Part shown: piece by piece, positions 53,901-64,000 of the stretch
How positions within the stretch are numbered: the first letter of the stretch is position 1
Layout: the number at the start of each line of letters is the position of its first letter
Source: Mytilus trossulus
Taxonomy: Eukaryota
Length of the DNA: 64,000 nucleotides
Direction of reading: 5' to 3'
Assembly: GCF_036588685.1 (NCBI RefSeq)
Contig: NC_086377.1
Span: 43,586,001 to 43,650,000, forward strand
Translations under genes and position numbers: made by a program
Notes under the pieces: model-generated
Told to the model about the DNA's origin: nothing
The model's input: the letters and a program-made list of their open reading frames with translations, nothing else
Database searches by the model: none

Positions 53901-54693
53901 TTATAATTATAAAGACAAACTAGATACATGCATCAAGTCGTAAAAGCCCTATTCATACTTAAAAATAAGAATTCAACTTTTCCTTCAATCATTCAATTCA
54001 GATAAATTGAAATACCAACATATTACCCCACTAAGTTGTTTTAAATTATAAATTTAATACATTTGAATGCATTAAGCAACTGACGTTGGTTACAAAACAT
54101 AATTAAAACAAGTACAATGTGTTCCTTTTAACAAAATAAGACATCATTATAAACGGTGAGTTGATTCTATTACCAAACTTATTTAATTATCCGCAAATTT
54201 AAAACTTATAACAGATGTAACGTGTAACAAAATTAATCATTAGCTGGCATGTAAATGTTAACACGGCTTACACAACACAAAGCATTTTTATTTAATACAT
54301 CTAAGCACAAATGTAACTTAACTATTAAAAAATAGTTTAATCAGTATAAATGCTACCCAAGTAAGCGATAAGATAAATTAATGAATCAAACTATTTGCAA
54401 GAAATAACTTTCAAATAAAATAAAATTATTCTTTTACAAATTACAGAAATAAAATTATTCGGAAAATTCAACTGAAATAACTAAATCTATCTATCAATAA
54501 AACATATGTCTTATATTATATCTAAATCAGCCTATCCCTTTTGTGTTCCTTCAGTTCAAATCACGCTATGAACAAATCACGAAAAGCATGCAATGTTATA
54601 CCAAATAAAAGCGGGAAAACCGCGTATGAAATTATATGGGTAAATAAAAGACGCTCAAGTCCTTAAAAATTGAAGACAAGTTAACTCTAGTTT

Positions 54694-55085
54694 CACTGGG
54701 GTAAAGCTGATGACCGTAACTGCATTCACGGTCATCCCAAGATGTCAGCTGAAAAAATAGGTCAGTATTTTTATTGTCTGTTAAGGTGTTTCTACATCAT
54801 TTTCTTTACAAAGCATACATTGGTACGATGTAAATTTATAAAAGATTCACACAGAAGTCACAAATCTCTACCTAGGAACGTGTATAGAACGGGAAATTGG
54901 ATTTGAAAAATTCGCTAAGATGATCGTAAATCATCTTTAAAATATTTTCAGGATGACCGTAACATATAATAAGGATGACCGTGATTGGTAAAATGATGAC
55001 CGTAATTTCGAAAGGATGACCGTAATTTATAAAGGATGACCGTAACTTTCATAGTATAACCGTCATTTCTAAGAAATATCCGTCT
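54694..55085 (+). repeat. Putative left end and subterminal GATGACCGT(AA) motif array of the P-like element
   Basis: Motif at 54709, inverted at 54728-54737, then at 54951, 54973, 54995, 55014 and 55034 plus 2 degenerate copies at ~20-bp spacing. Candidate terminus CACTG at 54694. Confidence 0.7.
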
Positions 55086-58000
55086 TTGCATTACCTTTTT
55101 TTGTAACAAATAATTAATCGTGTTAGTGTAAGACGTATCTATAAGACAACATTATCATAAAGGTAGAGAAAAATAAGACGTGCTTCAAATACATGGTTCG
55201 TCATATGAAACATCAAACTACAAGCCAAAAGATTTTTTTATTTCTGAGATTCCTATTAATCTTATATAATAAATACATCTTTTTAGAAATGACAAAAAAA
55301 GGCAATGGATGTACAGCCATTTATATCATGTCGTTTCAACTACCATTGCAGATGTCGTTTTTTTTATTTCAGATACGTACATGTGTTATCAATTTTCCAC
55401 TTGCAAGTTCACCTCATCTAATGTAGACAGCATTTTAATACACACTATAGACAATCATTTTGGTCCACAAACATTTAGTTTTAGGAAGAAAGTTTTGGAT
55501 GAAAACACTGGTCATACAGCATATAGGTCCGTACATTTCGGAATTGAAGTCACAAAACTTAAAATGATGTTAGCAAAAGGTTATAAGCCAAATATAAATT
55601 TAGAAGAACAAACCATATGTTTCAAAAGATGTTCCTCGACTTTGAAAGTGAGTGGCGATTATATCGAACAAGAGTGTCAAACTGAATTAAACAATGAACT
55701 TTATGATATATTGCCAAATATTGAAACAAAGCTAAAAGAGATTGGAAGATACGAGAACTTCATTTCAGTGTTGAAATCCATAGCTAGTGGAATATTAACT
55801 CAAAATATTGCTTTTCATTTGTTACTGGATGTCGGAAGATTCTATTCCCAGTCAACAATTTACTCGACAAGATATGTTCCAGAAACTCTGGCATTCTGGA
55901 TAACGATTAAGAAACTATTCAAGGGTAAAGGAGTTAACTTTTTTAGAGGTTATAAAGCACAAGATATATCCGCTGAAAACGCACCAGTCAAACCAACTGA
56001 ATGCAAAATAAATTTTGCTGTTCCATCAGATCCAGTATTGACAAGAGAATGTGTTAGTTTTCTGGCAGATGCCGAAAAAACTGGAATGTTACATACATCA
56101 CTAGATGCCTTCACAAAGAATAAAACTGGTCAAGATGTCAAACTGTCGATAGATGGTACAAAGTTGGCATGTGGTTTAGGTGTACTTGGTGATGAAGATT
56201 TGTGCGGGTTTGAAAATCCCCCAACTCTGTCTGACCGTAAAAGAAATCTTGAAATAGAACTTAACACTCTGAAAGAAGTAAAAGACATCACAGAAACAAA
56301 CTCAATAGATAACACGATAAATATTACTGATTTAGACAAGGACAATATTTTAACAATGAAACAAGCAATTCTTATATCGATCACAAACCTAAGCATCCGC
56401 ATTAAAGACTTGAGGGAGCTAATTGTGAAAAAGAAGTTAGGATTGACAAACCTGATGAAAGAAGTAGAAGGTGACTGGAAAGATAGTAAACTCGCACCAG
56501 CGATCAGTTTTTGCAAGACAAAAATTATTCACTCACAGTCAACAATAAAGGATCTGTTAAACTGTATTGACAATCTTGGCTTTATTGTTGCGTGCATTAA
56601 TGGCACCGCTGCAGACTATGTAATAGGATGTGGGACAAAAGTTCATCTAGATAATCAAACTAATTATATATGCTTGAAGCATCTTACAACAGACCTCGAG
56701 ATAAATGCCGAAACGTCAGACAGCATAAAACAAAGGAGTGATAACTGGAAAAACTTGAGAGCAGGTAGTCGAGTAACTGGTAGTACATTGTTCCGTGCTA
56801 TAGGATTGGGCACTCTGAAAGAACAACAAACACATTACGACAAAGTGTATCGTGGTGTTGAAGTTCCGGTGTCTTCAAAACTGCAGCAGCTTTTCGACTA
56901 TGGTACAGCCCAGGAAATAAATGCAATAGGAACACTAGTTGGGACGATCATACCTGTCTACTTTCCTCAGTTGCAATATAGGGAAGATGGTTGTAAGATT
57001 CTTCCGATTGGAGATTCATATGCCATAATCAGCGGTGATGGCAGTGGTATTGATCATATGGGTGAAAATAAAGTAGCATTTGAAATTAAATGTCCGATTC
57101 CAAATAAGGAAAGAACTACTGATTTACACTACGAGATACCCGTGTACTACTCAACTCAAGTTTTAAGTCAACTGAAAGCCAAACAAAGTTTAAAGTTTTG
57201 TTACTTGAGTTACAATCCAGGAAGCACAACCTTCATTGAAGGCATTATGAATGATGATTTATGGGGTAAGGTATGGGATTCTACTTCGGAACTGTATGGT
57301 AGAGTGGATGCAACAAGGCCTACGAGAAATAAACCAGAGCAGAAAGTGTTGCTAGCTGATCTGAAAGAGTATGCAACAGCATCTTAATTCGTTGCCGAGT
57401 TTCCTTCGTTGTTAAGCGTCCAGTGTAGTTGTGAGTCTACTGATGATTATGATAATGTATACGGATATCGTCGTTGAACACTTCTTTGGACACACTTTCA
57501 ATTGTAGTGGATAAAACGTGTACTGCGTTGAATGATGCCTACCAAACTTTGCGCAAGCCAGCAAAAGAGATTTTGCTGACTGTTGTTTCCGATCTTGAAC
57601 GCAAGACCTCTGATGATTTTGACACAGCAAACTATGCAGTTCCTATCCAATATGCTCTTTCTGGATACAGTCTTTCAATGTGTTGCGTTCGAAAATTACT
57701 AGACATGTCGTTGGTAGAATGTTCAAGTCGAAAATTAAATGTTAAGGCAATCGCCTTCGATGGGCAATTTCTTGAGTTGGCGGTTTCTGACGACTGTGGC
57801 CGACCTCTTACAATCTGTCGTTTTATGAAGCAGTTCTGGGATCAGGTAAAAAGGACCGACAAAGCTATTAAATTGACTACTTTATTGAACCTGAACAAGT
57901 TGCCGTCTATATCAACGTCTAAAGATCTGTTTGAACATTTTGATATTCATAAAACTCCAAACTCAATGATAACAATAAGTAAGAAAGAAAAAAGTAACAA

Positions 58001-60900
58001 AAACTCTATCTGGGAAGAATATCAGCAAAGCAATTCAGGCTTCACAGTCAAACGTCAAGAATGTCGAAACAGAAACTACATCAGATGATAACCTAAAGAC
58101 TGCCCACCTGGATATTTTGCAATACATTCCGAATGAGATTGTATCCGAATTGGATGAGTCCATGCTCGAAATTCTTAGACAACCATGTAAAGCTGTTACA
58201 GATGATGCAAATACCAATGAGCTATCACTGGCAAATGAAACTGACTACAAACCAGAGGATATTGACTTTGAAACGTTAATAATATCGCTGATTGCATCAT
58301 CAGATGAAGGGACAAAATGGATGCAAGTCTCGTTTGAATGTTTCAAGCAATGCTTTGCAAATGCAAAAACTATAAAAAAATCCTTTACATCAGCAGAATT
58401 GAAAGTAATTGCAGGTGTTACCGAGACTTTGGCGTTATATTCAAAGATGTTGAAACCAGCATTAGTAAACTTAGTGTGCAAGCTATATGGCGATGGGTCC
58501 AATATATCTTCTGTTAGAACAACCAATCCGAAATCACTAAAGGCACTCGTTATGTGCAAGATAAAGAAATGGCCAATTTCAGCAGTTAATGTTGCATTTG
58601 CACAATTAAACTTTCGAAGTGCACTAAATGAATGGGAAAGTGAAAACGCTTTTAATGGGTCATGGAATATGGAAACGGAAAATGGACAACAATATGAAAT
58701 TCATCGATGGTACGCACAACCGATGATAGCAAAGGGCCAAATGATCCAGCCTATTATAGATCCTCATCATCTGTTTGTCAATAATAGGGCAAGATGTTGT
58801 TCTAAAGGTATTTCTGGTATGGGAGTCAGCAGTGAAGCTTGGTGGAAAGTAGCTGGGAATTGCACAGAAAACGGCACAGGTCTATCATTGGAGATAGCTA
58901 AGGAACTTCGTGACAAACAAAAAAATTCTTATGCGCAGACCACTTTCAGCGAAAAAGTACAATTTGAAATGATGAAAAATGGAGATTATACAGAGGCTGA
59001 ATGGTGTAGACTGATTCGAAATTGGTATGCAGCTATCGATGAGGGTGGTATGTGTATAGAGAAACGTATTGAATGCTTACTAGCGATGAGGGATAAATTA
59101 CTGCCATATTTACATGTTGGTCACTTTCCGCCGCCAGGAGCATATGTAGCCTCTCTTCCAATGGCCCAGTTTGAAGGGATACTGAGCAATGTTGACAGGC
59201 GATTGCAGCTGTATGGAATGGTACAACGAGGAAGTTATAACCAAAGAGCTGTTACCAGCCTGGACTCAGAAACATTTTTTTCAGGGTTTCAGGTAAATAT
59301 GAAAAATATGTTTAACTGACATTACAAATTAAAATTCATGACCACTGCCATTGATCATACATCAAAAAATGAACAGAAAATATTGTTATGGACTATATAT
59401 ATGGCTAACTTTAATTATTGTGTACGATGATTTGAAATTGAGCCTTTGATCATGAGACATGAAAGCTTAAGCCAAGTTTGACGAATTCACTATTTTGGAT
59501 TATAGCTTGAAACTATTATAAATACATACTGTTCCATGTTTGATTGGTTAATATTAAAATGATCAGCGTACGGTTAGTATTTTGATAAGTGTAATGTATT
59601 GTGTAACCATTTTCTGAAGTCTTCAATAATTATAAATATCATATAAAAGTACTTCGTTATATTTAGATAATTGTTTTTAATGGACAACTTAATACAAAAT
59701 TAATTTTTTTAGGACTATGACCCAAAGGGGACTGGTGTGTTGAGACCAGATGATATACCAACAGCTTTAGGTGCAGCAGTGTGTTTGTTCAGTCAACGAA
59801 TGGATTCTAACAGGTGATTTAAACGCTATAATGTGCTCAGTTTTATCGTCAAATGCAGTTTTGTCTCATATATCTCAAAATATTCTCTGTTGATACAGAT
59901 TTATTTGACCATGCTTGTCGTTAATCTCTCTAAATGGTCAACTATTCAGTGCTTATTATGTACATTACTAGTATACTAAATATCATATTTGAATTATTTA
60001 AATTGTAAATTATAGGAAGATCTACTCTCAGGCATCTGATTGTCTTATTTTGATAGTTGTTGATGGTATTTTCAATACTATGAACACCATTCCCTGTCAT
60101 TATATTTAACATTTCATTGTAGAAAATTTTATATGAAGACGTCCAAGAAAACAAGAGTTTATCCAGAACAAAGTCTCAGTCAAAACTGTAGCGCCGATGG
60201 AGAAATGGAAGAAACTGAGTTGTACAACTGTTTCAATACTCGTATCATTAAAATAAAGTAAGTCAGGTATATGACAGATGTTATCCATTCGTTTGATTTT
60301 CTTGAGTTTCTGATTTTGCCATTTGATTAGAGACTTTCTGGTGTAGAAAACCGCAGAGATTTTTTGTAATTTTTCCTTTTACTACATTTCCGTATAAAAT
60401 ATCATGATGTTTTATGTATGACAATGTTTGAAGTTAAAACACACAATCGATGTCAAGTGCACAGTAATTTAATTGCAATGATATTCATAGGCAAAATTGA
60501 GAACTGAAAAGTCTTTAAGCTTTTGAACTTCATTAGTCATTAACAGAATTGTGTACAAGCGGATAACATTTTGTCATCTGTTGATCGGATTTACTTATTT
60601 TCTATTGAAATGGGTATTAATAATAATACTACCATTAAACTATATGCTTGATGTATTCGAATGAAATAATATTTATCCCTCAAATGTATGATGTTTTATG
60701 TATATTACAGATCAAACCAATTTGATCTCCCTGAAAGAAAAGCTGTTAATCCCAAAAGAAAATGTGGAAGAATTTCTTCATTTGGTGTCCCTAGTAGAGG
60801 TGCAGAAGGAGCACGATCTCACCACAAGACAAATGAGGAAAAGATATTAGCGCATAGACGATATGGAATTTCTGATGACAATATAGATTTAAAAAATTAA
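54742..60900 (+). pseudogene. P-element-like DDE transposase with inserted YqaJ (lambda-exonuclease) domain and N-terminal C2H2-like finger; 1 nonsense + 2 frameshifts
   Basis: Phase-compatible exons 54742-54760, 55373-59292, 59713-59813, 60123-60257 and 60711-60900 (4365 nt). P-like motifs in order: KLSIDG, KAIAFDG, IIDPHHL..NR, DKQK..AQTTFSEKV, CRLIRNWYAAID, TSLDSETFFS. YqaJ motifs: QRSDNW..R...VTGS, G...E, SGDG, EIKCP, YYSTQV.SQL. Lesions: TAA 57385, frameshifts at ~57456-57474 and ~57981-57993. Confidence 0.8.
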
Positions 60901-60998
60901 TTGCTGCTGTCCAATTGAATCTGTAATGAAAATGAAAAATAACCACACACATGTCAATTTCTTCATCTGTTATTTAATGCATTTTTTATGTACATTAT

Positions 60999-62528
60999 TT
61001 AATGTTTTTTTGTCATGTGTCTCTTATAATTGGATCTATATTTATATGAAATGTTACAGATTATACACACTAAACACTTGGCCATGTGTTCTGCTTGTTC
61101 ATGTCTTCTTAAAGATCTTTTATAAGAAAAGCTGGTGCCACACTCCTTGCACGCAAATTTCTGTTGTAAGTGTTTTGCCTTGATGTGTATCTGTAGGTCC
61201 TTATTGTGGACATAGTCCTTTCCACAATCCTTACACTTGTATTGCTTCTCCTGAAATAAATTAACCGAAAAATAGATTCAATATACAATGACAAATAAGA
61301 CAATAAATACAATGTGGTTTGTTGTCGAGCCTGCAATTGTTGTTGCAGAAAACTAGGTATAGGGATAGTGATCATGTGGCGGCTACTGCGGCATGAGCTC
61401 AATGTTTAAAAGTTATATATTTTAGAAGTTGGAAAACTCTGATGCTTCATACTTTGTATATAGATGCCTCATGTTACAACGTTATCGTCTGTCACATGTC
61501 CGTGCTCCTTGGCCTCATTTTCATGGTTTAGTGACTATTTTAAAAAAGAGTTAGGAATTTTTGTAATGTTAATTTTCTATCTTATTATGGGCAACAGGGT
61601 AACTATATTTGGTATGTGCGTACCTTGTAAGTCCCTCATACCCGCCAGACAGTTTTCACATGACATGGGCCTCATATTATGTATCAGTGAATAAGGTAAA
61701 GTTCAATATTTCAGATACAATAAGCTATATGTCTAGTATATTCGGTGTATGGAAGGACTGTAAGGTGTACATGTCTACTGGCAGGGGTCATAAGACCTTG
61801 ACCCCATTTTCATAAAATTTATTTGTTCAATGTGAGATTCAATTAATCATCTAAAGTTTACCTGCACATGATTCAAAACATGAGATCGAAACAAAGTCCT
61901 TGATACATATTTTTTAGGACACTGTGCACAACTGAAAGGAGGTTCCTCATGTTCTCTTTTCTTATGGACTCTTAGACCCTGCGTGGTTTGGTATGTTTTC
62001 CCACATTTGTCACATTGTTGAGTCGCTGAAATAACAAAATATTGATTTAAATTTTATATTTGTCATTAAAAATATTCTGGAGTAACCACTTATGCAATAC
62101 TGAAGAGTTATCAGTCACAATTTGAATATTTCGTATTCACAAAACCCTTGATTGGTTATACTATAAGTTATAAAGATGTCTACTGCCATCAAATAAATTA
62201 TATATTTCTTTTAACTCAGGATTGTTTTAACATTGAAGTGAACGGACGTTGACAACGACCTTGTTTACAGAAATGTTGAGAGTTCAATTTCAGTTTGTCT
62301 TTTACTTTTACTATATTTTATTGCTTTCTATGTAATGTATTGCACGATTGTTTGTTGTTTGCTCTACGTCCAGTGGGAACTATCTAAAGCATTATTCGGA
62401 CGAGTATTGTTATTTGACAGTTTCCAAATACATCTTACCAGTGACCGTTTTTTCCAAAGGGGTACTTGCACTCTGGGTTTCAGGGTCAAAATTAAGAATT
62501 GACCCGTCGTGACCTGATATATCCTTTC
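60999..62528 (-). CDS. C2H2 zinc-finger protein, 5 tandem fingers (5' exons unresolved)
   Basis: Exons 62439-62528, 61862-62025 (CDKCGKTY..LRVHKKREH; CAQCPKKY..FRSHVLNH) and 60999-61250 (CKDCGKDY..HIKAKH; CKECGTSF..HEQAEH; CIICNISY..HMTKKH*). GT-AG junctions, phases match, no stops. Not in the ORF track. Confidence 0.9.
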
Positions 62529-64000
62529 CTGTAATATATAAATGATAACTAAGTCATAGCTGCAACAATGTATATCAAGAAAAAGATAATCATGAGATTT
62601 TTAATAAAGTTCCAGATTTTTATTTTTCAACAATAGATTTATCATTTTTAACTTGGGATCAGAAACCTTAAAATTCTTATAACTTTCAGCCAAAAATTAA
62701 AAAAAAAAAGTAATTTGAATTGAAATTTTCCTTAGATGAATATTAAAAACAATCGATTCTGTTATTTAGTTTCATCGGAAATATCAATTATGGACTATGT
62801 TTTCTTAACAAACGAAACAAACAAAACAAAACAAAACTCAAGAATAATGAATAAAAAACAACATTTTAAGGTAGCCAGAGGGTCCTTCACTTACCATGTT
62901 GCAAATGTTATACCCTTGGACTACCTAAAGTACATTTCCTTATAAAATCCAGATGATATTAAATTATAGTCTGACTGAATAACACAGTTGTGTTCTGTTC
63001 AGGGGTGATGAAAGAATTTCTAGAAAAACACATATTTGAAAATTTAATAACTTTTTAGGTAATGGAACGATCATTTGATTCTGAGTTGAGTGCCAGGCCA
63101 GGTAGATTCGATCATGTCAAATTTTTATTAAGACAGTTTTACGGTTCAGAAAATATATTACAAATACTGCAAAACAATTCCAATTTTTACTGAAAAAGTA
63201 CACGGAGATATGAAACGATTAGCCTGAATTTTATTTTCAAATTTATCGAGGTTAGAAGAAATTTATGAAAAAGCTGTCAGCCCTACAACCACCAACCCCG
63301 ACCCCCTTTCCCCTGGAGTTTTACCAAGAAATGTACTTTTCAACAACAATAAAAAAACAAATAGAACATAACTCATAAACGAATCTGTCTCGGGCACTTT
63401 CACAATGACATGCATGAATCAAGGTTAATTTAATATCATATAGGTTGCCATATATGCATCTGCATATTTGCCAATAAACAGTATGTGATCACGAGTTTTA
63501 ATTGTATATACTTTCAAAAATGCAGATGGGCAACTTATTAATTTCTTATGCTAGTATTTAATTTTGTAGCTGTCTTAATTGTTGGAAAAGAGGGGCGAAA
63601 GATACCAGAGGAACATAGTGAAAACATATAATAGTCGTTATCTCGGGATCACATAACAGTTTTTAGTATATCTGCAGATGCGTATACATACTTCAACGTT
63701 TATGATACGACCCCGTCTAATAGAAAACCAACAGAGTGATTCAAAATTTTGCAATGACTCAAATCATGAAGTTTACATCATTAGACTCATAACAATTGAT
63801 AGCTAAAATAAAATTACTAAAATTAAGAGTTGATCATGTGTTCATAAGTGTAAGTGCCCAGACTATCTATATACCATCAATACTGTCCAACGATATATCC
63901 TTAAAAAGTAAAAATAATTCATTTAAATAGAACAAATTGTTAAAAAAAAAAGAAAGTCAATTGATTAGTTGTGATCCATTGCATGTTATTAACAACTTAA

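What the first reader, a model, noticed from the sequence alone, without database searches (positions are those of the whole stretch)
54742..60900. P-element-type transposase with a lambda-exonuclease (YqaJ) domain inserted inside its DDE core
Seen: one spliced ~1,450-codon frame carrying, in order, KLSIDG (~56140), a YqaJ domain with its catalytic-type motifs intact (~56725-57270: QRSxxW..TGS, SGDG, EIKCP, YYxxQ), KAIAFDG (~57750), DPHH (~58760), DKQK..AQTTFS, and SLDSETFFS (~59260). Established: P-element/THAP9 transposases have D1 (LxFDE), D2 (AIVxDxG), a D(2)H motif opening the GTP-binding insertion, and QDxLExFF; YqaJ domains are PD-(D/E)xK 5'->3' exonucleases. Inference: the exonuclease sits between D1 and D2, the D2-to-D(2)H spacer is greatly expanded, and a C2H2-like finger (CYQFSTC-x12-HTIDNH) replaces THAP. 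A DDE enzyme with an internal resecting nuclease could process the long staggered ends typical of P excision, or promote gap repair. I do not know of a described P lineage with this architecture, but cannot exclude an existing Repbase/Dfam entry.
Basis: partly seen in the sequence, partly recalled or inferred. Interest (0 to 1): 0.9.

Follow-up and report, generated by a model that had tools for sequence, protein, structure and literature searches.

The report
P-like transposon with built-in exonuclease
The window holds a dead copy of an 11-kb mussel transposon whose cut-and-paste enzyme has the fold of the fruit-fly P-element transposase with a lambda-exonuclease-type nuclease built into its catalytic core. 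I found no description of this design in the searchable literature.

Summary
They do not form one spliced frame. The window copy is broken by a TAA stop (57385-57387), a 31-bp deletion (57467) and a 1-bp insertion (57988).

The copy sits inside a complete transposon, 54694 to 1,752 bp past the window end (11,059 bp). The element has about 410-bp inverted ends starting CACTGGGG, a 5-bp target duplication (AGTTT) and a convergent 5-finger C2H2 gene.

Intact relatives in the same genome are single intronless ORFs of 1,386-1,477 aa in elements of about 7-11 kb.

An AlphaFold model of a compact member (pLDDT 88) matches Drosophila P transposase at Z 27.2 (349 residues). Transib scores 11, RAG1 9.7 and Hermes 8.6. 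The inserted domain matches lambda/LHK exonuclease at Z 15-17, and this was also shown for the window's own sequence.

Both catalytic sets are nearly invariant across 98 relatives from molluscs, an annelid and amphioxus: D, D, D(2)H and E for the transposase, and D, E-x-K for the nuclease.

The family lacks THAP, makes 5-bp rather than 8-bp duplications (10 of 10 insertions) and has CAC...GTG ends. It is therefore P-like in fold but not a canonical P element.

No paper pairing YqaJ with P, THAP9 or Transib was found. Repbase and Dfam could not be searched.

The scan had noted the same stretch twice more (two-gene transposon; GATGACCGT array).

The parts
54689..54693 (.). 5' copy of the 5-bp target-site duplication AGTTT. 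The 3' copy lies just after the element end, 1,753-1,757 bp past the window end.
54694..64000 (+). Full transposon insertion. It runs on to position 65752 on the window's scale (C5:43651752), total 11,059 bp, so the last 1,752 bp lie outside the window.
   Evidence: Both ends start CACTGGGGTAAAGCTG in inverted orientation and are flanked by AGTTT.
54694..55103 (+). 5' terminal inverted repeat, about 410 bp, 84% identical to the 3' arm. It carries six ATGACCGT motifs, which are candidate protein-binding sites.
55381..57384 (+). Transposase coding segment 1. It contains the N-terminal C2H2-type finger (55384-55458), the HTH-like region, the D1 motif KLSIDG (D at 56152-56154), a long helical stalk and the YqaJ/lambda-exonuclease domain.
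56683..57318 (+). YqaJ / lambda-exonuclease-fold domain of the window copy (residues 435-646 counted from 55381). Its D (57037-57039), E (57082-57084) and K (57088-57090) are intact.
   Evidence: The AlphaFold model of the window's own ORF (pLDDT 89) matches LHK-Exo at Z 16.8, rmsd 2.4, 171 of 195 residues, and lambda exonuclease at Z 15.9.
57385..57387 (+). In-frame TAA nonsense codon inside conserved coding sequence.
57486..57983 (+). Transposase coding segment 2, shifted in frame by a 31-bp deletion at 57467. It holds the D2 motif KAIAFDG (D at 57759-57761).
58009..59294 (+). Transposase coding segment 3. A 1-bp insertion at 57988 restores the frame. It holds the expanded helical spacer, the D(2)H motif DPHH (58759-58770), DKQK..AQTTFS and the catalytic-E motif SLDSETFFS (E at 59269-59271).
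59295..59713 (+). Canonical GT-AG intron with a polypyrimidine tract.
59714..59814 (+). Penultimate exon. It matches residues 1430-1465 of the intact 1,467-aa relative and is followed by a GT donor. The short last exon was not found.
61002..62053 (-). Convergent accessory gene encoding five C2H2 zinc fingers in at least two exons (61850-62053 and 61002-61277).
   Evidence: The same kind of gene is present in the intact C41 and C6a elements.

Best explanation
The stretch is a decayed copy of an autonomous cut-and-paste DNA transposon, about 11 kb long. The transposon family is widespread in marine invertebrates.

Its roughly 1,450-aa transposase has the P-element/THAP9 type of catalytic core, namely an HTH, a split RNase H fold and an alpha-helical insertion domain that opens with D(2)H. 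The core is remodelled in several ways:
- A module of about 470 aa is inserted between strand beta1 (carrying D1) and strand beta2 of the RNase H fold. The module is a four-helix stalk carrying a lambda-exonuclease/YqaJ PD-(D/E)xK nuclease.
- A partly disordered helical spacer of about 250-350 aa separates D2 from D(2)H.
- A C2H2-type finger stands where P has THAP.

The elements end in CAC...GTG, have long inverted repeats with subterminal repeat arrays, make 5-bp target duplications, and often carry a convergent multi-finger C2H2 gene.

Shown here: the element structure, recent mobility of sister subfamilies, both folds, and conservation of both catalytic sets.

Inferred:
- The DDE site cuts the 3' ends and joins them to target DNA with a 5-bp stagger.
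- The embedded nuclease cuts or resects the 5' (non-transferred) strand at the transposon ends. TnsA does this for TnsB in Tn7, but here both activities sit in one polypeptide.
- Resection of the donor break to favour homologous gap repair is the second option.

The window copy itself cannot make this protein.
For: Element structure:
- The window element has TIRs and the TSD AGTTT.
- Nine further insertions from four other subfamilies all have CAC...GTG ends and 5-bp TSDs.
- The C41 and C10 copies are 98-99% identical over 11.4 kb with different flanks. At least 462 candidate termini were found, including 1.6-3.6-kb non-autonomous derivatives.

Fused gene:
- Intact intronless ORFs of 1,386-1,477 aa occur in this genome.
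- Proteins of 1,400-1,690 aa occur in Batillaria, Owenia, Branchiostoma, Ruditapes and Mytilus.
- The representative library holds 1,178 clusters of relatives.

Folds:
- P0087 model, pLDDT 88, pTM 0.80.
- P transposase Z 27.2, against Transib 11.0, RAG1 9.7 and Hermes 8.6.
- Foldseek gives P transposase E 5.5e-4 and LHK-Exo E 3.6e-5.
- The window's own ORF gives LHK-Exo Z 16.8.

Sequence:
- Pfam YqaJ hits 16 of 26 members (best 2.9e-14). TNP-like_RNaseH_N hits 4 of 26 (best 1.4e-5).
- hhalign motif correspondences for D1, D2, D(2)H and E.

Conservation over 98 sequences (non-gap counts):
- D1 54/54, D2 94/95, D(2)H 93/93 and 93/93, E 81/82.
- Nuclease D 80/82, E 82/83, K 80/83.

Topology:
- In the full model the D1 segment is a 10-residue strand at pLDDT above 90.
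- In the model of the N-terminal piece alone it is unstructured at pLDDT 50-72.
- This fits pairing of that strand with strands that follow the nuclease.

Window copy is dead.
Against: - Model coordinates are not exposed. Convergence of the three acidic residues and the exact residue-level alignment to P (D230/D303/E531) are inferred from ranges, secondary structure and weak profile alignments (20-31% hhalign probability).
- Pfam P-family models stay below their gathering cut-offs, and the GBD and RNase H C models do not hit at all.
- Only P, hAT, Transib/RAG and a few other superfamilies have solved structures. A superfamily without a structure could be the true nearest relative.
- Nothing here shows any biochemical activity, GTP use, or what the nuclease cuts.
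Confidence: 0.8

Rival explanations
1. It is a Transib/RAG-type transposon, because the ends and target duplication are those of Transib.
For: 5-bp TSD in 10 of 10 insertions. All ends start CAC, and the C41 subfamily starts with the exact RSS-type heptamer CACAGTG. The literature search ties that combination only to Transib/RAG.
Against: HzTransib scores Z 11.0 and RAG1 Z 9.7, with rmsd above 5, against Z 27.2 and rmsd 3.1 for P transposase. There is no RAG1 Pfam hit. Other subfamilies share only CAC (CACTGGG, CACCGTG, CACGGTC, CACGGCC).
Confidence: 0.04
2. It belongs to a DDE superfamily that has the D(2)H motif but no solved structure, such as Dada, Kolobok or CMC. It looks P-like only because P is the nearest solved structure.
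For: Dada transposases are also about 1,400 aa, have DxxH, and in some lineages carry an exonuclease (DEDDy) inside the core (PMC3706591). Pfam P models are sub-threshold here.
Against: The only transposase Pfam family that hits at all is the P/THAP9 RNase H N model. P-specific motifs line up: LPSxxxL before D1, and DxxHL[IL][KT]xxR. Dada makes 6-7-bp TSDs in small-RNA genes, whereas these elements make 5-bp TSDs of ten different sequences.
Confidence: 0.12
3. The window locus is an intact, spliced, possibly domesticated host gene.
For: One real GT-AG intron lies near the 3' end. The ORFs are long.
Against: A TAA sits inside conserved sequence, and there are two frame-shifting indels relative to a 98% paralogue. 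The gene lies between TIRs with a TSD. The gaps between frames are 12-26 bp, too short for introns.
Confidence: 0.03
4. The nuclease is a secondary nested insertion or a gene-prediction fusion, for example of an ISL2EU YqaJ gene, and not part of the transposase.
For: ISL2EU elements encode YqaJ as a separate ORF (PMC4482050). Earlier notes of the scan report such elements in this genome.
Against: The raw genomic DNA holds uninterrupted ORFs with the nuclease between D1 and D2 in five subfamilies that are 28-45% identical. The same order is found in four phyla. In the model both flanks of the nuclease form one helical stalk.
Confidence: 0.01

Closest known systems
Drosophila P element transposase / THAP9 (P superfamily)
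   Same: The HTH, split RNase H and helical insertion-domain fold (Z 27.2, 349 residues). The D, D, D(2)H, E motif order, with P-like local motifs.
   Different: No THAP domain; a C2H2-type finger stands in its place. A nuclease-on-stalk module of about 470 aa lies between beta1 and beta2. About 250-350 extra residues separate D2 from D(2)H. TSDs are 5 bp, not 8 bp. Ends are CAC...GTG with TIRs of 60 to 550 bp. A convergent C2H2 gene is often present. Pfam P models score below their cut-offs. GTP use was not tested.
Lambda exonuclease / LHK-Exo (YqaJ, PD-(D/E)xK)
   Same: The fold (Z 15-17, rmsd 2.4-3.4) and the D...E-x-K catalytic set, plus the conserved Q and W.
   Different: Here it is an internal domain of a transposase, not a free toroidal trimer working with a single-strand annealing protein.
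Transib / RAG1
   Same: 5-bp target duplications and CAC ends. One subfamily starts CACAGTG.
   Different: The structural match is much weaker (Z 9.7-11). There are no RAG1/Transib sequence signatures.
ISL2EU transposons (PIF/Harbinger group)
   Same: A eukaryotic cut-and-paste transposon that brings its own YqaJ nuclease (PMC4482050).
   Different: In ISL2EU the YqaJ protein is a separate second ORF, the transposase is Harbinger-like with THAP, and the TSD is 2 bp.
Dada transposons with an internal DEDDy exonuclease
   Same: An exonuclease domain is inserted inside a D(2)H-type DDE core (PMC3706591).
   Different: The exonuclease family differs (3'-5' DnaQ-like). The insertion point differs (between D2 and DxxH). 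Dada inserts specifically into small-RNA genes.
Tn7 TnsA + TnsB
   Same: A PD-(D/E)xK nuclease and a DDE transposase cooperate to cut both strands for cut-and-paste, with 5-bp TSDs. This rests on established knowledge and on the abstract of 10.1101/2021.02.11.430876 listed.
   Different: Tn7 is bacterial and uses two separate proteins with a restriction-enzyme-like TnsA, not a YqaJ domain. The analogy is functional and untested here.

Membership tests
P superfamily (P element / THAP9) | RNase H catalytic core with an HTH before it, homologous to P transposase | tested here: met
   VIA Z 27.2, rmsd 3.1, 349 of 442 residues, chain 166-569. Foldseek E 5.5e-4. Weak profile alignments place D1 and D2 on P's.
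P superfamily (P element / THAP9) | Helical insertion domain that opens with D(2)H, between D2 and E (the GTP-binding domain in P) | tested here: inconclusive
   The fold match spans the chain range that contains the P insertion domain. D(2)H is 93/93 conserved and aligns to P's. The Pfam GBD model does not hit. GTP-contact residues were not examined.
P superfamily (P element / THAP9) | [quoted passage not shown] | tested here: not met
   No THAP hit in any of 26 members. C41, C4 and the window have a C-x2/5-C-x12-H-x4-H finger instead.
P superfamily (P element / THAP9) | 8-bp (7-8) target-site duplication | tested here: not met
   5 bp in 10 of 10 insertions from five subfamilies. The 8-bp value for P is from PMC7776569.
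P superfamily (P element / THAP9) | Pfam TNP-like models above the gathering score | tested here: not met
   Best 1.4e-5, 4 of 26 members, below the 24.6-bit cut-off. Canonical P copies in the same genome score 70-96 bits.
YqaJ / lambda exonuclease family | PD-(D/E)xK fold of lambda exonuclease type | tested here: met
   Window ORF model against LHK-Exo: Z 16.8, 171 of 195 residues. Family model: Z about 15.
YqaJ / lambda exonuclease family | Catalytic D ... E-x-K | tested here: met
   80/82, 82/83 and 80/83 conserved. Present in the window as SGDG and EIKCP.
YqaJ / lambda exonuclease family | Pfam PF09588 above the gathering score | tested here: met
   Relatives: 16 of 26 at E up to 0.01, best 2.9e-14. 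The window piece alone scores only E 0.11.
YqaJ / lambda exonuclease family | Toroidal homotrimer and processive 5'-3' digestion | not testable with these tools
   No oligomer or activity test was run.
Transib superfamily | 5-bp TSD and CAC(A/T)(A/G)TG termini | tested here: met
   TSD in 10 of 10 insertions. The exact CACAGTG occurs in one subfamily and CAC only in the others.
Transib superfamily | RAG1-core-like transposase | tested here: not met
   Z 11.0 (Transib) and 9.7 (RAG1), against 27.2 for P. No RAG1 Pfam hit.
ISL2EU | Harbinger-type DDE plus a separate YqaJ ORF, with 2-bp TSD | tested here: not met
   Here the nuclease is fused inside one ORF and TSDs are 5 bp. The ISL2EU features are from PMC4482050.

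The most novel reading that the evidence does not exclude
These elements form an unclassified, bilaterian-wide lineage of cut-and-paste transposons at about superfamily rank. In this lineage a P-type DDE core has captured a catalytically intact lambda-exonuclease-type nuclease. That nuclease does the 5'-strand cleavage or resection at the transposon ends, as a single-polypeptide counterpart of Tn7 TnsA-TnsB. The chemistry at the ends is changed as a result: CAC...GTG termini and a 5-bp stagger, in place of P's 17-nt staggered cut and 8-bp duplication.
Probability: 0.3. Interest if true: 0.85.

Novelty: new variant of a known kind. Interest (0 to 1): 0.7.

Why it matters
How eukaryotic DDE transposases deal with the second (5') DNA strand is a defining difference between superfamilies. 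Some form hairpins, some use the same active site twice, and P makes a 17-nt stagger whose mechanism is still open (PMC7776569).

A P-fold enzyme that carries its own PD-(D/E)xK nuclease inside the RNase H fold offers a third solution in eukaryotes, one so far known from bacterial Tn7.

The genome holds near-identical full-length copies with defined ends and intact ORFs, together with non-autonomous derivatives. The idea can therefore be tested directly in excision and integration assays.

There is also an annotation point. About a thousand protein clusters are now labelled only 'YqaJ viral recombinase domain-containing' or 'hypothetical'. They are transposases and should be masked or annotated as such in invertebrate genomes.

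Tried and rejected
- Pfam and PDB sequence searches on the window pieces alone gave almost nothing: YqaJ at E 0.11 and no P hit.
- A profile search of the PDB found only lambda-type exonucleases, weakly (E 0.03-0.09).
- An inverted-repeat scan restricted to the window missed the TIRs, because the 3' arm lies outside the window. The TIRs appeared only after I fetched 10 kb beyond the window.
- I first took the 98% paralogue on C1 as marking the element ends (55219 to about 65023). That was wrong. The C1 stretch is an internal partial duplicate without TIRs.
- The ESM Atlas gave only an unnamed YqaJ cluster at 0.81.
- Whole-alignment hhalign against canonical P gave only 23% probability.
No reads were laid, and neither expression nor the window's stop and indels could be checked against raw data.
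- The pieces were searched separately by reference.

Full report
**What is in the window**

They lie in three long ORFs: 55309-57387, 57474-58088 and 58117-59319.

Full-length relatives align colinearly over all three ORFs, and over a further exon at 59714-59814. The junctions between the ORFs are not introns.
- A TAA at 57385-57387 sits directly before the conserved FVAEFPSL.
- The two frame changes are a 31-bp deletion at 57467 and a 1-bp insertion at 57988, relative to a 98%-identical partial paralogue on contig C1.
- One canonical GT-AG intron (59295-59713) is present, followed by an exon and a further donor.
- The start is most likely the ATG at 55381, where the Mytilus edulis homologue begins.
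- The proposed exons at 54742 and 60688-60900 have no homology support.

The window gene is therefore a decayed copy.

**The gene sits in a complete transposon**

I fetched the 10 kb beyond the window. This showed inverted ends that both start CACTGGGGTAAAGCTG, one at 54694 and one at 65752 on the window's scale.
- The element is 11,059 bp long.
- The arms are about 410 bp and 84% identical, each with six ATGACCGT motifs.
- The element is flanked by the direct repeat AGTTT.
- On the minus strand a five-finger C2H2 gene (61002-62053, at least two exons) converges on the transposase gene.

This agrees with two other first-stage notes on the same stretch.

**A mobile family**

The genome is a Mytilus, 1.3 Gb. 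One relative is 98% identical to a M. galloprovincialis protein. The genome has at least 37 matches to the C-terminal third of the protein, several of them in long uninterrupted frames.

I recovered five subfamilies with defined ends.

| Subfamily | Element size | Ends start | TSDs seen |
|---|---|---|---|
| C41 type | 11.4 kb | CACAGTGTGGGAACGG | TAAGG, GGATG, AGGCT, TAATT, AATAT, TATAT |
| C6a | about 9.0 kb | CACCGTG | AATAT |
| C6b | about 7.1 kb | CACGGTC | TAAGT |
| C11 | about 9.9 kb | CACGGCC | ATAAT |
| Window type | 11,059 bp | CACTGGG | AGTTT |

- All ten insertions examined have 5-bp target duplications and CAC...GTG termini.
- The C41 and C10 copies are 98-99% identical over the whole element, with unrelated flanks.
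- The terminal 200 bp of the C41 type has at least 462 candidate matches, including 1.6-3.6-kb non-autonomous derivatives. That subfamily was therefore active recently.
- C41 and C6a also carry a convergent C2H2 gene.

**The protein**

Intact copies encode single intronless ORFs of 1,386-1,477 aa.

A scan of 1.84 billion representative proteins with the C-terminal 778 aa found 1,178 clusters at E up to 1e-3. Named members come from Batillaria (gastropod), Owenia (annelid), Branchiostoma belcheri, Ruditapes and Mytilus. They are labelled only 'hypothetical' or 'YqaJ viral recombinase domain-containing'.

In a 26-sequence full-length alignment the invariant residues include the following (C41 numbering):
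- D308 in DGKK.
- D861 in FDGQ.
- D1253 and H1256.
- E1424 in ExFF.
- The nuclease residues D609, E628 and K630, which are conserved in at least 90% of the sequences.

Counts in a 98-sequence alignment (non-gap):

| Site | Conserved |
|---|---|
| D1 | 54/54 |
| D2 | 94/95 |
| D of D(2)H | 93/93 |
| H of D(2)H | 93/93 |
| E | 81/82 |
| Nuclease D | 80/82 |
| Nuclease E | 82/83 |
| Nuclease K | 80/83 |

Pfam finds YqaJ in 16 of 26 members (best 2.9e-14). It finds the P/THAP9 model TNP-like_RNaseH_N in 4 of 26 (best 1.4e-5, below its cut-off). No other transposase family hits.

**Structure**

A natural compact member, P0087 (1,145 aa), contains all the motifs. With a 98-sequence alignment it gave a confident AlphaFold model (pLDDT 88, pTM 0.80).

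Foldseek's best hits were LHK-Exo and lambda exonuclease (3.6e-5 and 5.5e-4) and the Drosophila P element transposase strand-transfer complex (5.5e-4). RAG1 scored 0.07 and Hermes 0.33.

Re-alignment with VIA-align gave the following:
- P transposase 6p5a_A: Z 27.2, rmsd 3.1 Å, 349 of 442 residues, model 1-1137 onto chain 166-569.
- Lambda-type exonucleases: Z about 15, for model residues 266-485.
- HzTransib Z 11.0, RAG1 Z 9.7, Hermes Z 8.6.

The secondary structure of the model runs in this order:
- An N-terminal helical region.
- Strand 83-92, which carries D89.
- Three long helices (108-230).
- The nuclease (about 257-504).
- A fourth long helix (549-570).
- Strands 576-584 and 596-604.
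- Helix 610-626.
- Strand 630-636, ending at D637.
- A partly disordered helical spacer (640-900).
- Strands 909-924, leading into D925xxH928.
- A helical domain up to E1095.

I read this as an insertion of a four-helix stalk plus nuclease between beta1 and beta2 of the RNase H fold. Two facts support it indirectly.
- The P match starts at model residue 1 and covers 86% of P's residues 166-569, a range that includes D230.
- The D1 segment is a confident strand in the full model, but is unstructured (pLDDT 50-72) when the N-terminal 668 aa of the window copy are modelled alone.

**Sequence-level cross-check against P**

The same genome has canonical P/THAP9-like transposases with all three Pfam P domains. 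I compared their profile with this family by hhalign. The motifs line up as follows:
- INFAVPSxxxL with GFITLPSxRTL.
- LsxDGKKI with LLFDEIKIK (D1).
- sfDGQW with tCDGAS (D2).
- iDxxHLLTNlR with sDvPHLIKTtRN.
- SLxxExFF with QDxxExxF.

Probabilities are only 20-31%, so on their own these alignments are weak. They agree with each other and with the structure.

D2 to D(2)H is 392 aa in C41 and 288 aa in P0087, against about 40 aa in canonical P.

**The window's own nuclease domain**

The window segment 55381-57384, modelled with 57 relatives (pLDDT 89), matches LHK-Exo at Z 16.8 (rmsd 2.4, 171 of 195 residues). It matches lambda exonuclease at Z 15.9 over residues 435-646, which is 56683-57318 in the window. 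The D, E and K are intact.

**How it probably works**

Shown:
- A transposon with TIRs and 5-bp TSDs that moved recently in this genome.
- A P-fold DDE core.
- An embedded lambda-exonuclease-fold domain.
- Purifying conservation of both catalytic sets.

Inferred:
- The DDE site nicks the 3' ends and transfers them to target sites 5 bp apart.
- The nuclease handles the 5' strand. Either it makes the second-strand cut, as TnsA does next to TnsB in Tn7, or it resects 5' ends after the break, which would favour homologous repair of the donor gap.
- The subterminal ATGACCGT arrays are binding sites for the transposase's N-terminal finger/HTH or for the C2H2 partner protein.

I rate the 5'-strand-processing role at roughly 0.4. 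It has no direct evidence.

**Comparison with known systems**

- Against P (8-bp TSD, THAP, D230/D303/E531, GTP-binding insertion domain, 17-nt stagger; PMC7776569): the fold and motif order are the same. The DNA-binding domain, the TSD length, the termini and the two large insertions differ. The Pfam P models do not reach threshold. So I do not file it as a canonical P element.
- Transib shares only the ends and the TSD.
- Precedents for transposon-borne exonucleases exist. ISL2EU has a separate YqaJ ORF (PMC4482050). Some Dada transposases carry a DEDDy exonuclease between D2 and DxxH (PMC3706591). Earlier notes of this scan report ISL2EU elements elsewhere in this genome; I did not test them.
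- No paper in the searchable library pairs YqaJ with P element, THAP9 or Transib.
- Pfam's precomputed hits already put PF21787 and PF09588 on one Batillaria protein. The architecture is therefore visible in databases but, as far as I could find, undescribed.
- Repbase and Dfam could not be searched.

**Limits**

- As a result, elements in other species, expression, and read-level confirmation of the window's lesions were not examined.

**Verdict**

- The window copy is dead.
- The family is a new variant of a known kind: P-like in fold, with a distinct architecture and distinct end chemistry.

Noticed in passing
window 61002-62053 (-); L022:3613-4251 (-); C6a element: A multi-finger C2H2 gene converges on the transposase gene in three of five subfamilies. 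It has five fingers in the window copy. It may be an accessory DNA-binding or regulatory protein of the element.
   Followed up: partly
window 54694-55103, and the mirror arm 1.3-1.75 kb past the window end (L041:1340-1752): Each 410-bp terminal arm carries six ATGACCGT motifs about 20 bp apart, plus one inverted copy near the tip. This looks like an array of protein-binding sites.
   Followed up: partly
G000:C1:95234077-95249548 (L017, L002, L040, L042): A 98%-identical partial duplicate of the element's interior (window 55219 to about 65023). It has no TIRs, has its own frameshifts and a 214-bp deletion, and carries two large insertions. It looks like a segmental or aberrant copy rather than a transposition product.
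   Followed up: partly
G000, e.g. C13:27068477-27070046, C17:635772-639045, C4:10096138-10099696, C1:60519857-60523265 (L024-L027): Short (1.6-3.6 kb) non-autonomous derivatives of the C41-type element with perfect ends and 5-bp TSDs. At least 462 candidate termini occur genome-wide.
   Followed up: partly
G000, 41 matches, e.g. L028 (C1:84829504-84832941), L035: Canonical P/THAP9-like transposases occur in the same genome, with ORFs of 750-930 aa and all three Pfam P domains. Several copies are identical in length, which suggests recent activity.
   Followed up: partly
P0087 model residues 640-900 (C41 residues about 865-1175): The long spacer between D2 and D(2)H is variable in length, partly disordered and otherwise helical. 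No fold match was assigned to it.
   Followed up: no
L012:3892 onward: The C41 subfamily's terminus is the exact V(D)J RSS heptamer CACAGTG with a 5-bp TSD, although the enzyme has a P fold and not a RAG/Transib fold. Other subfamilies keep only CAC.
   Followed up: yes
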